Below are positions 23,834 to 31,522 of a DNA stretch of 64,000 bases, piece by piece; the stretch's first letter is position 1; the number at the start of each line of letters is the position of its first letter. Both the position numbers and the translations under genes were made by a program. The notes beneath the pieces are model-generated. The model had not been told where the DNA came from. It saw only the letters and a list, made by a program, of their open reading frames with translations, and did no database searches. Location of the stretch: the IMG/VR virus record IMGVR_UViG_3300042934_000594, positions 1 to 64,000 of that record, one strand, 5' to 3'.

Positions 23834-24541
23834 ATGATTGAAGCTCTTTTGCAACACTCAGGACCCTTTCGTGAAGACACCGGGAACGTGCTCTTTCTAT
23901 TTGACCCCGAAACCGGCACGGACCTCATGGGCTCAACGCCCACGGTGGCCTATACCAACTCCGCAGGGCCAGATGCTTTCGCCATCCGGGGCAAACCTAC
24001 TTATGCCCTCCCAAACACCAATGCGGGTCTGACCATCACTCTGGCCACACCGCTAAACCTTCAAGGCAAGAACTGGACACTGGAGTGGTCCACGTACAAC
24101 ACAGGTGCGTTTTCTGCCTACGCTTGGGAATTGGGTTTGGTAAACGCCAGTGCAGGGATTCAGGCGCGGTATGGCAACTCAGGTTTTGGCAGTCGTCTGC
24201 AAGTGGGGACTAACTTTCGAACGGTTGGAGCCGCCTGGAACCCACCGGTGTCTAACGCCTCGACGTTGAACGTGCTTAAAGAATACGCCCTGGTCTGCAA
24301 GAACAACGCCATCAGTATGTTTGTTGACGGCAAGAAACAAAAGTTCGCCAACGGAACCGGGTCAGTGTACAACACTGATTCGTTTGCCCCTGCTGATGAC
24401 TTGTCGGGTTTGACCCGGATCATTGCCGGCTTTCAAGGCAGTACGGTCCCGGCGGTAATCAGTAAGCACGGACGCATTCGCATCAGTGACTTTGCCCGCT
24501 ACACCCGCGACTACGAACCTAAGTTGTTGGAAATGGTGTAA
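23834..24541 (+). CDS. LamG-like beta-sandwich virion protein
   Basis: WTLEW, YALVCKNNAISMFVDGKK, RISDFARY pattern; starts MIEALL. Confidence 0.7.
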   Translation: MIEALLQHSGPFREDTGNVLFLFDPETGTDLMGSTPTVAYTNSAGPDAFAIRGKPTYALPNTNAGLTITLATPLNLQGKNWTLEWSTYNTGAFSAYAWELGLVNASAGIQARYGNSGFGSRLQVGTNFRTVGAAWNPPVSNASTLNVLKEYALVCKNNAISMFVDGKKQKFANGTGSVYNTDSFAPADDLSGLTRIIAGFQGSTVPAVISKHGRIRISDFARYTRDYEPKLLEMV

Positions 24542-24568
24542 AAGAATACTGGCGGTAGTATGGTATAC
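24541..24568 (+). promoter_or_regulatory. bipartite promoter of tRNA operon (AAAGAATACTG-N8-ATGGTATAC)
   Basis: Both boxes and the spacer length are identical at 25672-25699; upstream box resembles phiKZ middle-promoter AAanntTAC. Confidence 0.65.
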
Positions 24569-24852: not shown

Positions 24853-24860
24853 ACCCTTGT

Positions 24861-25019
24861 TTGAAGCGTTGAGAGCGAGTGGTGGAACATGGTATACGTG
24901 GGGGATAGCATCCCCTAGTCGGGGAATATAGACTCCGGCCGCCTGTCCGTTGGTGCCTTCGTGGTTTGCGGGTTCGAACCCCGCCTCAGAGAGAACGGAT
25001 CATATTCTCAACGCTTCAA
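24861..25019 (+). ncRNA. tRNA-like RNA L1 (Leu-type D-arm and T-arm, rebuilt anticodon and acceptor domains)
   Basis: Perfect 14-bp terminal helix ttgaagcgttgaga/tctcaacgcttcaa; TGGTGGAAcaTGGTATAC D-arm; gcggg-TTCGAAC-cccgc T-arm; no 7-nt anticodon loop, no CCA. Confidence 0.7.
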
Positions 25020-25026
25020 CTTTTTA

Positions 25027-25203: not shown

Positions 25204-25279
25204 TCCATGATAGCTCAGTTGGTAGAGCAACGGACTGTTAATTCGTTGGTCCCTGGTTCGAGTCCAGGTCATGGAGCCA
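25204..25279 (+). tRNA. trnN: tRNA-Asn(GTT)
   Basis: TCCATGA/TCATGGA acceptor, acgga-CTGTTAA-ttcgt, TTCGAGT, encoded CCA. Confidence 0.95.
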
Positions 25280-25283
25280 CATT

Positions 25284-25313
25284 CATACGGCCTCCCGCAA
25301 GGGAGGCTTTATG
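25284..25313 (+). terminator. GCCTCCC-family hairpin closing the tRNA operon
   Basis: gcctccc-gcaa-gggaggc-tttatg. Confidence 0.7.
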
Positions 25314-25339
25314 TCGGATCTGTATTTAAGGAGTGGAGT

Positions 25340-25660
25340 ATGCTGTCAGTTCGCCTGGATAAAGAGTGTGACGAGTACCTGCGAAAATTGGCAGACCTCG
25401 AAGACCGCTCCATCAACAACCTGATCAAGCGCATGATCCTGGAGCATAAGCGTTACAACCCACTGGCTGAGGACGGTGGCATCCTACAGCTGGAACGGGG
25501 CGTCAAGCATGCGTTCATGATTGTCTTGGACGGTAAGGTCGTAGGGACACTCAACCGCGGTCCTGGTGGGTTACTGGCCTTGGAGCTGGACACTACTAAC
25601 CTAGGTTCTCCTGTGCCACATTGGTCTAAAGACCTGCCAAGCGGTGCTGTGACGGACTGA
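25340..25660 (+). CDS. ribbon-helix-helix (Arc/CopG-like) DNA-binding protein
   Basis: MLSVRLDKECDEYLRKLADLEDRSINNLIKRMI RHH pattern; AAGGAG RBS. Confidence 0.75.
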   Translation: MLSVRLDKECDEYLRKLADLEDRSINNLIKRMILEHKRYNPLAEDGGILQLERGVKHAFMIVLDGKVVGTLNRGPGGLLALELDTTNLGSPVPHWSKDLPSGAVTD

Positions 25661-25671
25661 CCTGGTTACTG

Positions 25672-25699
25672 AAAGAATACTGACCAGGTCATGGTATAC
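25672..25699 (+). promoter_or_regulatory. second copy of bipartite promoter (AAAGAATACTG-N8-ATGGTATAC)
   Basis: Identical boxes and spacing to 24541-24568; ends 18 nt upstream of L2. Confidence 0.65.
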
Positions 25700-25716
25700 G
25701 AAGCAGTTATGCAATC

Positions 25717-25823
25717 CCCTGGGTAGCTCAGTTGGTTAGAGCGTTGCCGTTGTGAGAGTCCGTTAGTCCGGGTGCTTTTGCAGCAGTGAAGGCCGATGGT
25801 TCAAATCCATCCCTCGGGGCCTA
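25717..25823 (+). ncRNA. tRNA-like RNA L2 (intact D/T arms, expanded anticodon domain, CCTA end)
   Basis: ccctggg/cctcggg acceptor with one mismatch; TAGCTCAGTTGGTTAGAGC D-arm; gatgg-TTCAAAT-ccatc T-arm; about 30 extra nt between the arms; own promoter and terminator. Confidence 0.7.
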
Positions 25824-25839
25824 TTTTGTGAATTATACA

Positions 25840-25864
25840 GCCTCCTTCACGGGAGGCTTTATAT
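25840..25864 (+). terminator. GCCTCC-family hairpin
   Basis: gcctcc-ttcacg-ggaggc-tttat directly after L2. Confidence 0.65.
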
Positions 25865-25880
25865 CGTCGAGGCATTAGCC

Positions 25881-29303: not shown

Positions 29304-29336
29304 CATACGGCCTCCCTTCGGGGAGGCTTTATGCCG
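29304..29336 (+). terminator. GCCTCCC-family hairpin
   Basis: catacg-gcctccc-ttcg-gggaggc-tttatgcc. Confidence 0.7.
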
Positions 29337-29388
29337 TCTCGGGAAATACCCCCGCTTTATATCCTATGCCAAAACGCCTTGTCTTGGC

Positions 29389-31415: not shown

Positions 31416-31486
31416 TTTAGTTCACTTGCCCAGGCGGAGGAAGGAGGCCCACAGGCATCCCGATGTATAGCATTGGACGTGTGGAC

Positions 31487-31522
31487 GGCATAAACCCTCC
31501 CCGTAACAGGGAGGGCCTTTTG
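31487..31522. terminator. CCCTCCC-family hairpin after nrdB
   Basis: ggcataaa-ccctccc-cgtaaca-gggaggg-cctttt. Confidence 0.65.

What the first reader, a model, noticed from the sequence alone, without database searches (positions are those of the whole stretch)
25717..25823. L2: separately transcribed tRNA-like RNA with an expanded anticodon domain
It has an intact D-arm (TAGCTCAGTTGGTTAGAGC), T-arm (gatgg-TTCAAAT-ccatc) and a near-complete acceptor stem, but about 30 extra nt replace the anticodon arm (including a tgct-tttgc-agca hairpin), and the end reads CCTA rather than CCA. It has its own copy of the tRNA promoter and its own terminator. The insert is too short for a group I intron, and removing it does not restore a clean stem.
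Basis: partly seen in the sequence, partly recalled or inferred. Interest (0 to 1): 0.75.

Follow-up and report, generated by a model that had tools for sequence, protein, structure and literature searches.

The report
Phage tRNA look-alike without an anticodon
A soil jumbo phage carries a small gene with a perfect tRNA body whose anticodon arm is replaced by a long hairpin, so it cannot decode; it is either a tRNA mimic, like a conserved one in related phages, or a recently broken tRNA gene.

Summary
Window 25717-25819 (+) matches the Rfam tRNA model at 39.5 bits (threshold 29). The acceptor, D and T arms and all tertiary-core positions are intact, but 46 nt stand where the 17-nt anticodon arm should be. 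One acceptor pair is mismatched (U4.C69), and the 3' end reads G-CCU, whereas all four neighbouring tRNAs encode CCA.

The element has its own copy of a promoter-like motif that occurs only in this tRNA cluster in the 269-kb genome. It also has its own terminator.

The window belongs to a phiKZ-like (nucleus-forming) jumbo phage from soil. The extra sequence is not an intron. It most likely extends the anticodon stem into a roughly 19-layer, GU-rich hairpin with no anticodon loop.

I found no homologue of this element. In a near-identical strain the whole cassette (a ribbon-helix-helix ORF, this RNA and its terminator) is replaced by 622 other bases. No expression evidence was available.

The nearest isolates (Psa21, D6 and one IMG/VR contig) carry a tRNA-like gene of the same design: a lengthened anticodon arm, an unpaired base in the middle of the acceptor stem, and no CCA. 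That gene shows seven compensatory pair changes inside almost invariant flanks.

Best reading: a non-decoding tRNA mimic (0.45). The main rival is a decaying tRNA gene (0.38).

The parts
25672..25699 (+). Promoter-like motif: an A-rich block ending in TACTG, an 8-nt spacer, then ATGGTATAC. The predicted transcription start is near 25701, which is inference.
   Evidence: It duplicates 24541-24568 upstream of tRNA-Tyr. ATGGTATAC occurs only at 24560, 24889 and 25691 in the 269-kb genome. It fits the phiKZ motif of TACT centred 22 nt upstream of the start and preceded by A's (PMC8244752). The same AAAAGAATACT follows the homologous upstream gene in related contig L054.
25659..25690 (+). 8-bp perfect inverted repeat (GACCTGGT / ACCAGGTC) that brackets the TACT block and overlaps the stop codon of the upstream ORF. 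It could be an operator or an RNA hairpin.
   Evidence: Read directly from the sequence. Function not tested.
25717..25819 (+). tRNA-like RNA gene ('L2'). C25716 can pair with G25819 to make an eighth acceptor pair.
   Evidence: Rfam tRNA 39.5 bits, model positions 1-71. Positions 8-30 and 44-65 are letter-for-letter those of ordinary bacterial tRNAs; the variable-loop/T-arm block is shared with tRNA-Val, Ile, His and Met genes, and the 5' block matches the tRNA-Val(CAC) of L038 exactly.
25744..25789 (+). Expanded anticodon domain of 46 nt in place of 17. It consists of 4 bp of anticodon stem, a C.A mismatch, an 11-bp helix with 5 G.U pairs, a 2-nt bulge, 3 bp and a 6-nt loop (UUAGUC). It contains a tandem AGTCCG-TT-AGTCCG.
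   Evidence: Folds. Helix probability is about 0.99 with the cloverleaf fixed, but the z-score is only -1.2 to -1.5 against shuffles.
25820..25823 (+). 3' tail CCTA. The CCA end is not encoded, unlike in the four neighbouring tRNAs.
25835..25866 (+). Intrinsic terminator-like hairpin followed by TTTAT. It is a diverged copy of the terminator after tRNA-Asn (25285-25316).
25340..25660 (+). ORF of 106 aa with an N-terminal ribbon-helix-helix domain. It lies in the same strain-variable cassette and has no relative in the protein collection searched.
   Evidence: Pfam RHH_1, E = 7.6e-5. The only hit among 5.8 billion clusters is itself.
25316..25874 (+). Strain-variable cassette (ORF106, promoter, L2, terminator), bounded by the two similar terminators.
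   Evidence: In run X3 a 42-kb contig with about 10-12 differences per 400-900 bases of flank joins 25315 to 25875 with 622 other letters in between (tables 5 and 8).

Best explanation
L2 is a tRNA-derived gene that no longer encodes a decoding tRNA. It encodes a tRNA-shaped small RNA, a tRNA mimic.

Proposed mechanism, with the status of each step:

1. The phage polymerase starts about 15 nt upstream, at the cluster-specific promoter, and stops at the terminator. This gives a primary transcript of roughly 160 nt (inferred).
2. The acceptor/T-arm stack and the D/T-loop elbow are intact, so host RNase P and 3' trimming enzymes should release a molecule of about 103-105 nt (inferred from what RNase P is known to recognise).
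3. The anticodon arm is replaced by a hairpin of about 19 layers with no 7-nt anticodon loop. The distance from acceptor end to 'anticodon' no longer fits a ribosome, and synthetases that read the anticodon cannot recognise it. The RNA therefore acts through its tRNA body (the structure is shown; the consequence is inferred).
4. The most likely role is as a decoy or competitor for a host factor that binds tRNA bodies. One example is an anticodon-arm nuclease of an anti-phage defence system, which could bind L2 but find no loop to cut (speculative).

The element sits in a strain-variable accessory cassette, as expected for a conflict gene.
For: - **Intact tRNA core.** U8, A14, G15-C48, G18G19, G26, G45/G46 and the T loop UUCAAAU are all in place. 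The core is identical over 23 + 22 nt to functional bacterial tRNAs. Every deviation is confined to the anticodon arm, one acceptor pair and the CCA end.
- **A complete transcription unit.** The two promoter blocks are perfectly kept while the spacer between them has diverged (1 of 8 positions identical), which argues for selection on the motif rather than a recent copy. A terminator follows.
- **The extra sequence continues the anticodon stem as a helix**.
- **A same-design gene in the nearest isolates.** Phages Psa21, D6 and contig G001 have a tRNA-like gene ('B') with an anticodon arm of 8-12 layers, an unpaired A in the middle of the acceptor stem, and no CCA although all neighbouring tRNAs encode it.
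- **B is under structural selection.** Between Psa21 and G001 the 240 nt upstream are 98% identical and the first ~120 nt downstream mostly identical. B itself has 7 pairs changed on both sides and none broken. It is therefore a selected, fast-evolving structured RNA, and the architecture is not simply decay.
- **tRNA-targeting defences exist.** Such defences, and phage tRNA counter-measures, are established (PMC10264068, PMC11555353; anticodon-arm cleavage by bacterial Schlafen, PMC13056530).
Against: - No homologue of L2 itself was found. Searches of IMG/VR, JGI metagenomes, 50,697 phage records and the neighbouring proteins gave nothing. Covariation therefore cannot be tested on L2.
- A near-identical strain lacks the cassette, and the closest contig with the same gene order (L054) has no counterpart.
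- The long hairpin is rich in G.U pairs and no more stable than shuffled sequence (z = -1.2 to -1.5).
- It contains a tandem repeat that looks like replication slippage.
- There is no expression evidence.
- L2 and B share no detectable sequence homology and have different D arms. The parallel may be coincidence.
- No candidate protein partner is encoded: TROVE/Ro, CCA-adding enzyme, RtcB and Rnl-type ligase are all absent.
Confidence: 0.45

Rival explanations
1. L2 is a recently inactivated tRNA gene (a pseudogene). On this reading an ordinary Val/Ile/His-type tRNA gene took an insertion or duplication of about 29 nt in its anticodon arm, plus two point changes (an acceptor mismatch, and CCA to CCU). 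It is still flanked by its old promoter and terminator and has no function of its own.
For: It is strain-specific and has no homologue. The internal tandem AGTCCG-TT-AGTCCG suggests slippage. The hairpin is not significantly stable. Loss of CCA and an acceptor mismatch are what decay produces. No expression was seen. Aberrant or partial tRNA genes are common in prokaryote and phage annotations (bioRxiv 10.1101/2022.07.05.498093, listed).
Against: None of the roughly 45 core positions has drifted from the canonical tRNA sequence. Both point changes fall in the 17 acceptor-end positions. The promoter blocks are perfectly conserved next to a diverged spacer. The same three peculiarities occur in element B of the related phages, which is clearly under structural selection.
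Confidence: 0.38
2. L2 is a cis-acting, tRNA-shaped processing or punctuation signal. On this reading the tRNA-like fold serves only as an RNase P / RNase Z cleavage site, or as a transcript-stabilising end, for the flanking mRNAs (ORF106 upstream, the 78-aa ORF downstream).
For: It lies between two small ORFs. RNase P needs only the acceptor/T-arm stack and the elbow, which are intact. The one phage-specific RNA contig runs from the end of tRNA-Asn through its terminator into ORF106, so read-through transcripts may exist (record 29).
Against: L2 has its own promoter-like motif between ORF106 and itself, and its own terminator before the next ORF. It therefore looks like a self-contained unit. 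A punctuation signal would not need a 46-nt arm.
Confidence: 0.1
3. L2 is a precursor of a real tRNA. On this reading the extra bases are a short intervening sequence that is removed, leaving a working tRNA, for example His(GUG) or Thr(UGU).
For: ARAGORN in intron mode offers tRNA-His(gtg) with a 12-nt intron. An eighth acceptor pair (C-1:G73) recalls the 8-bp acceptor of tRNA-His.
Against: The ARAGORN solution has an anticodon stem of 3 pairs with 2 mismatches and needs an invented long variable arm. The insert (29-42 nt) is far below the size of a group I intron. No splicing endonuclease, RtcB or Rnl ligase is encoded. Bacteria are not known to splice protein-dependent tRNA introns (established knowledge). 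The extra pair is C:G, not the G-1:C73 of tRNA-His.
Confidence: 0.04

Closest known systems
Element 'B' of Pseudomonas jumbo phages Psa21 (NC_062581, 295343-295424 minus strand = L020:3529-3610), D6 (OQ363659, 10533-10613, annotated 'tRNA-OTHER') and IMG/VR contig 3300042010_000058 (L004:3332-3417)
   Same: It lies in the tRNA cluster of a phiKZ-like phage, next to a homologue of the same 235-aa gene. It has a cloverleaf with normal D and T arms. The anticodon arm is lengthened to 8-12 layers and keeps the first four pairs. One base in the middle of the acceptor stem, after four G/C pairs, is unpaired. No CCA is encoded although all neighbouring tRNAs have it.
   Different: No sequence homology to L2 is detectable. 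The D-arm type differs (GCUU/AAGC against GCUC/GAGC). The unpaired base is A.A or a bulged A rather than U.C. The arm is shorter and G/C-rich. B lies between tRNA-Pro and tRNA-Asn without a promoter copy or terminator of its own. B has comparative support (7 compensatory pairs) and L2 has none.
Canonical elongator tRNA (Rfam RF00005), Val/Ile/His/Met type
   Same: Acceptor, D arm, variable loop, T arm and all tertiary-core nucleotides match. L2 scores above the family's gathering threshold.
   Different: There is no 5-bp stem with a 7-nt anticodon loop. Known decoding tRNAs reach at most 6 bp in this stem (tRNA-Sec, tRNA-Pyl, mt-tRNA-Ser; PMC7609411). One acceptor pair is mismatched and the end reads CCU instead of CCA.
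Bacterial Y RNA-like RNAs (YrlA, RF02553) and tmRNA
   Same: They are non-decoding RNAs that imitate the tRNA acceptor/T-arm/elbow and replace the anticodon arm with a long helix.
   Different: By established knowledge, YrlA is circularly permuted (its ends lie in the long stem) and works with Ro/Rsr. Here the ends form the acceptor stem, the genome has no TROVE gene, and no YrlA match covers L2. tmRNA lacks a D stem, exceeds 250 nt and carries a tag reading frame; ARAGORN finds none.
Phage tRNAs that evade anticodon nucleases (T5 and other phages; PMC10264068, PMC11555353)
   Same: They are phage-encoded and lie in tRNA clusters, and their altered anticodon region is linked to host tRNA-cleaving defences.
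   Different: Those are working tRNAs with point changes in a normal loop, and they replace cleaved host tRNAs. L2 cannot decode and could act only as a competitor.

Membership tests
Decoding tRNA (RF00005) | Cloverleaf with a 7-bp acceptor stem, a D arm and a T arm carrying the conserved tertiary nucleotides | tested here: met
   39.5 bits against a gathering score of 29. D stem 4/4 and T stem 5/5 pairs; acceptor 6/7 with U4.C69.
Decoding tRNA (RF00005) | Anticodon stem of 5 (at most 6) bp closed by a 7-nt loop with U33 and an anticodon | tested here: not met
   46 nt stand in place of 17. The favoured fold is an irregular hairpin of about 19 layers with a 6-nt loop. Standard ARAGORN finds no tRNA.
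Decoding tRNA (RF00005) | 3' CCA end (encoded or added) and aminoacylation | not testable with these tools
   The encoded end is G-CCU-A, while the four neighbouring tRNAs encode CCA. CCA repair and charging need experiments.
tRNA gene with a group I intron | Intron of roughly 200 nt or more with the P1-P9 core, inserted in the anticodon loop | tested here: not met
   Only 29 extra nt. No intron family was found in the Rfam scan at E<=1.
tRNA with a protein-spliced (bulge-helix-bulge) intron | Excision restores a normal anticodon arm, and a splicing endonuclease and ligase are available | tested here: not met
   The best forced solution has a 3-bp stem. No tRNA_int_endo, RtcB or RNA_ligase gene is in the genome.
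YrlA / Y RNA | Permuted tRNA-like module on a Ro-binding stem, with an Rsr (TROVE) partner | tested here: not met
   No RF02553 match covers L2. No TROVE gene is in the genome. The topology is that of a normal tRNA.
tmRNA | tRNA-like domain without a D stem, plus pseudoknots and a tag reading frame | tested here: not met
   The ARAGORN tmRNA search found nothing. The D stem is intact and the length is 103 nt.
Element B family (Psa21 / D6 / G001) | Architecture: tRNA body, lengthened anticodon arm, one unpaired base after four G/C acceptor pairs, no CCA | tested here: met
   Counting C25716:G25819 as the first pair, L2 has 4 C-G pairs, then U.C, then 3 pairs. It has a 46-nt arm and a CCU end.
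Element B family (Psa21 / D6 / G001) | Sequence homology (5' GCCCA, D stem GCUU/AAGC, 3' AGGGC) and position between tRNA-Pro and tRNA-Asn | tested here: not met
   No BLAST similarity in either direction. The D arm, the ends and the position in the cluster all differ.
tRNA pseudogene | Random loss of conserved core positions and pairs; not expressed | tested here: inconclusive
   The core is untouched, and only the functional ends are altered. Expression could not be assessed.

The most novel reading that the evidence does not exclude
L2 and element B may belong to an undescribed class of phage tRNA mimics. In this reading they are tRNA bodies that are deliberately made unable to decode or be charged, because the anticodon loop is replaced by a duplex, one acceptor base is left unpaired and no CCA is encoded. 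The fast-changing anticodon arm would be the interface of an arms race with host tRNA-binding defence proteins, acting as an uncleavable decoy or inhibitor of anticodon-arm nucleases. Psa21 and G001 would show that arms race directly: a hypervariable, always compensated RNA inside 98% identical flanks.
Probability: 0.2. Interest if true: 0.8.

Novelty: new variant of a known kind. Interest (0 to 1): 0.52.

Why it matters
Phage tRNA genes are usually explained by codon supply, or more recently by replacement of host tRNAs that defence nucleases cut. A tRNA-shaped RNA that cannot decode fits neither explanation. It would point to a third use of the tRNA fold by phages: competing for host proteins that recognise tRNA bodies.

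The related element B gives a testable entry point in cultivable phages. Psa21 and D6 grow on Pseudomonas syringae. In D6 the element is annotated only as 'tRNA-OTHER', and in Psa21 it is not annotated at all.

If L2 is instead a dying tRNA gene, it is an ordinary by-product of the rapid turnover of phage tRNA clusters.

Tried and rejected
**Searches for homologues of L2 (all empty)**
- Exact-pattern scans of IMG/VR with the D-arm/insert junction, the insert apex and the flanking terminator.
- blastn against 50,697 phage records. The only hit was a 31-nt D-arm match to tRNA-Met of PA5oct-like phages.
- Relatives of ORF106 and the 78-aa ORF in IMG/VR, JGI metagenomes and the 5.8-billion protein set.
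- A promoter-motif scan of IMG/VR gave 4 chance matches, none next to a tRNA.

**The variant strain**
- I could not fetch the 622-nt replacement. Exact-protein look-ups returned only the window's own record and one identical Logan contig.

**Expression**
- No RNA run holding the element was listed.
- The one RNA library containing the phage covers only 25269-25405, at depth about 3.

**Antisense target**
- No complementarity longer than 13 nt between the insert and the phage genome.

**Other phiKZ-like phages**
- An RF00005 scan of PhiPA3, Noxifer, HPP-Temi and KTN4 at E<=0.1 gave only hits of 73-86 nt, none longer than 90 nt. Only Psa21 gave a weak extra hit (19.5 bits), which is element B.

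**Readings rejected**
- YrlA. The weak YrlA hits are a T arm followed by the next tRNA's D arm, which is an artefact of adjacent tRNAs.
- tmRNA, group I intron and spliced tRNA: see the membership tests.
- A resemblance of two short pieces of the insert to a CRISPR repeat came only from my memory and I could not test it, so I dropped it.

**Not done**
- I did not build a covariance model of element B. MAFFT misaligned the variable arms, so pairs were counted by script instead.

Full report
**What the window is.** The window is the first 64 kb of a 269,430-bp IMG/VR virus record from a soil metagenome. A DUF7193 virion protein is about 50% identical to those of PhiPA3, Psa21, Noxifer and phiKZ-type phages. 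This is therefore a phiKZ-like (nucleus-forming) jumbo phage, probably of a Pseudomonas-like host. Its only tRNA genes lie in one cluster: Tyr 24591, Gln 24682, Asp 25027 and Asn 25204.

**Checking the observation.** The element at 25717-25819 (+) matches the Rfam tRNA model end to end at 39.5 bits (gathering score 29; E = 7.5e-5 for the window). The acceptor, D and T arms align, and 42 nt stand where the model expects 13. Reading the sequence gives these parts:
- acceptor strands 25717-25723 and 25812-25818, with one mismatch (U4.C69) and one G.U pair
- U8 A9
- D stem GCUC/GAGC with the loop AGUUGGUUA
- G26
- a five-base variable loop AGGCC
- T stem GAUGG/CCAUC with the loop UUCAAAU
- discriminator G, then CCUA

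Every nucleotide of the usual tertiary core is present. The four real tRNAs of the cluster all encode CCA. Standard ARAGORN does not call the element.

A scan of 185,579 prokaryote genomes with the variable-loop/T-arm sequence found 29 loci, most of them called as ordinary tRNA-Val, Ile, Met or His genes. One tRNA-Val(CAC) is identical to L2 from position 8 to 30 and from 44 to 65. The body of L2 is thus an unaltered class I tRNA body. Only the anticodon arm, one acceptor pair and the CCA end deviate.

**The extra sequence.** Between G26 and the variable loop lie 46 nt instead of 17. With the cloverleaf fixed, the ensemble is dominated (p about 0.99) by an 11-bp helix pairing 25749-25759 with 25774-25784. 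This helix stacks on the four remaining pairs of the anticodon stem. It is capped by a 2-nt bulge, three pairs and a six-base loop.
- Five of the 11 pairs are G.U.
- The fold is no better than shuffled sequence (z = -1.2 to -1.5).
- The apex holds a tandem AGTCCG-TT-AGTCCG.

Nothing resembling a 7-nt anticodon loop on a 5-bp stem can be drawn. ARAGORN in intron mode gives only a forced tRNA-His with a 3-bp stem, a 12-nt intron and an invented variable arm. The insert is far too short for a group I intron. The genome encodes no splicing endonuclease, RtcB or Rnl ligase.

**Transcription signals.** A 28-nt motif at 25672-25699 repeats the one in front of tRNA-Tyr. Its 11-nt and 9-nt blocks are identical, and the 8-nt spacer differs at 7 of its 8 positions.
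- ATGGTATAC occurs three times in the whole genome, all in this cluster.
- The left block (an A-run then TACT) fits the second phiKZ promoter motif of Wicke et al., in which TACT is centred 22 nt before the start (PMC8244752). That places the start near 25701.
- The same AAAAGAATACT follows the homologous upstream gene in a related contig, just before its tRNA-Tyr (L054).
- A terminator-like hairpin follows L2, and it is 84% identical to the one after tRNA-Asn.

L2 therefore looks like a self-contained transcription unit, but this is inferred from sequence only.

**Expression and population data.** No RNA run holding the element was listed. One soil RNA library contains a single phage-specific contig covering 25269-25405 and nothing over L2. 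Such libraries rarely capture tRNA-like RNAs, so this says little.

More telling is run X3. There, a 42-kb contig with only about ten differences per flank joins 25315 to 25875 with 622 unrelated letters in between. The whole cassette is therefore strain-variable. It comprises a 106-aa ribbon-helix-helix ORF with no relatives, the promoter copy, L2 and its terminator. It is bounded by the two similar terminators. I could not retrieve the replacement sequence.

**Relatives.** L2 itself has no detectable homologue. The gene upstream of the cluster (235 aa) led to related loci:
- Psa21 (51% identity)
- an IMG/VR contig, G001
- phage D6
- three Logan contigs

Psa21, G001 and D6 each carry a tRNA-like gene ('B') between tRNA-Pro and tRNA-Asn. 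Rfam scores it weakly (31.4 bits for the G001 copy, 19.5 bits for the Psa21 copy), standard ARAGORN misses the G001 copy and calls the Psa21 copy tRNA-Gly(acc), and the D6 record calls it 'tRNA-OTHER'. All three copies fold unconstrained into cloverleaves whose anticodon arm is lengthened:
- G001: 11 pairs interrupted by a bulged U, with a triloop
- Psa21: 8 pairs with a 7-nt loop
- D6: 10 layers with a 6-nt loop

All three keep an unpaired A in the middle of the acceptor stem, after four G/C pairs. None encodes CCA, although every neighbouring tRNA does.

Between Psa21 and G001 the 240 nt upstream are 98% identical and the first ~120 nt downstream are mostly identical. B itself differs at seven base pairs on both sides and none is broken. 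These are acceptor pairs 6 and 7, anticodon-stem pairs 3 and 4, and T-stem pairs 1, 2 and 5. A 99% identical Psa21 strain has an identical B. B is therefore a real, structurally constrained and unusually fast-evolving RNA.

**How L2 compares with B.** If C25716:G25819 is counted as the first pair, L2 has the same plan as B: four G/C pairs, one non-pair (U.C), then three pairs. It also has a lengthened arm that keeps the first four anticodon-stem pairs, and no CCA.

There is no sequence homology and the D arms are of different types. The two are either very diverged or independent derivations of the same design. Four other phiKZ-like isolates show nothing similar, and the closest syntenic contig, L054, has no L2 counterpart.

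**Interpretation.** It is shown that L2 is a tRNA-derived gene with an intact tRNA body and no usable anticodon arm. It sits in a strain-variable cassette and has its own promoter-like and terminator-like signals. It follows that L2 cannot be a decoding tRNA.

I favour a non-decoding tRNA mimic, processed by RNase P and acting through its body (0.45). The reasons are that all damage is confined to the functional ends, the promoter blocks are conserved next to a diverged spacer, and the same odd architecture is under selection in the nearest cultivated relatives. A decoy for tRNA-binding defence nucleases is the most attractive specific role, given the variable arm and the accessory-cassette context. 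That role is speculation.

The main rival (0.38) is a recently broken tRNA gene. It is supported by the lack of any homologue, the loss of the cassette in a sister strain, the slippage-like repeat and the unimpressive stability of the hairpin. A cis-acting processing signal (0.1) and a spliced precursor (0.04) are less likely.

**Comparison with known systems.** L2 works like tRNA mimics such as the tRNA-like domains of tmRNA and YrlA, in which a long helix replaces the anticodon arm. It fails the defining features of both (topology, partner protein, size). It passes the tRNA family threshold but fails the anticodon-arm criterion. Known decoding tRNAs have at most 6 bp in that stem (PMC7609411). 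I found no paper describing such an RNA in phages. The genome papers on Psa21 and D6 only count tRNAs.

**Verdict.** Novelty is moderate (a new variant of the tRNA-mimic theme), and it rests more on the comparative evidence for element B than on L2 itself. Interest is 0.52.

Noticed in passing
window 24855-25026 (+): This is a second odd element ('L1') between tRNA-Gln and tRNA-Asp. The third genomic copy of ATGGTATAC (24889) is followed by about 110 nt of hairpins that include a perfect T-arm-like GCGGG-TTCGAAC-CCCGC. The whole is enclosed by a 14-bp perfect inverted repeat (24861-24874 / 25006-25019). The fold z-score is -2.8. There is no Rfam match apart from a spurious YrlA hit.
   Followed up: partly
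L004:3332-3417; L020:3529-3610; L053:1123-1207: Element B is a tRNA-like gene of Psa21, D6 and an IMG/VR contig. It has a lengthened, hypervariable anticodon arm, a conserved unpaired A in the acceptor stem and no CCA. It shows 7 compensatory pair changes inside 98%-identical upstream and mostly identical downstream flanks. It is unannotated in Psa21 and called 'tRNA-OTHER' in D6.
   Followed up: yes
L004:3241-3329; L020:3436-3521: Element A is an unusual tRNA-Tyr-like gene that encodes CCA. It has a D stem of 5-6 bp and a 4-bp anticodon stem with a 9-nt loop containing GUA. Standard ARAGORN misses it, and its best Rfam match is a weak tRNA-Sec hit. Similar sequence occurs in 210 phage records, nearly all from Pseudomonas phages of several unrelated groups and mostly unannotated. 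One G-C to A-U compensatory change separates the Psa21 and G001 copies.
   Followed up: partly
L020:3610-3740; L004:3418-3540; L053:1201-1337: About 130 nt just downstream of element B are conserved among Psa21, G001 and D6 and carry three hairpins, one with a UUCG loop. A 70-nt part is 76-83% identical to unannotated sequence in unrelated ~47-kb Vibrio phages and in 'Phage TPWB-08'. There is no Rfam match.
   Followed up: no
L054:7350-7600; L057:3712-3960: A non-coding region of about 260 nt follows the tRNA cluster in two related Logan contigs and is 85% identical between them. It has two long-range complementary pairs of 10-11 nt and a stretch resembling a tRNA acceptor strand plus D arm, followed by a palindromic hairpin. 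There is no Rfam match and it is absent from the window's genome. It may be a large structured RNA.
   Followed up: no
L020:3853-3985; L057:3628-3712: The tRNA-Asn(GUU) genes of Psa21 and a related contig are 85-88 nt long. They carry a 9-12-nt insertion in the variable region, which is unusual for a class I tRNA. In Psa21 the gene is preceded by a 5' fragment of another tRNA-Asn.
   Followed up: no
window 25285-25316, 25835-25866, 29305-29340, 31480-31515(-); genome 97850, 111330, 186680: Terminator hairpins of the form GCCTCCC-loop-GGGAGGC recur at seven sites in the genome. Each is followed by a conserved TTTATGTCG/TTTATGCCG tail. They may be combined terminator-promoter modules; late promoters of phiKZ-type phages centre on TATG, but that is from my memory and was not checked.
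   Followed up: no
window 25316-25874: The cassette holding ORF106 and L2 is replaced by 622 unrelated bases in a closely related strain present in two other soil runs (X3, X4). The slot after tRNA-Asn behaves as a hotspot bounded by terminator repeats.
   Followed up: partly
L004:2770-2937; L054:6908-7072; L057:3385-3549: A small conserved ORF of about 54 aa (MKVKI..., with two Cys pairs) sits inside the tRNA clusters of three related phages. No counterpart was noticed in the window's tRNA cluster.
   Followed up: no
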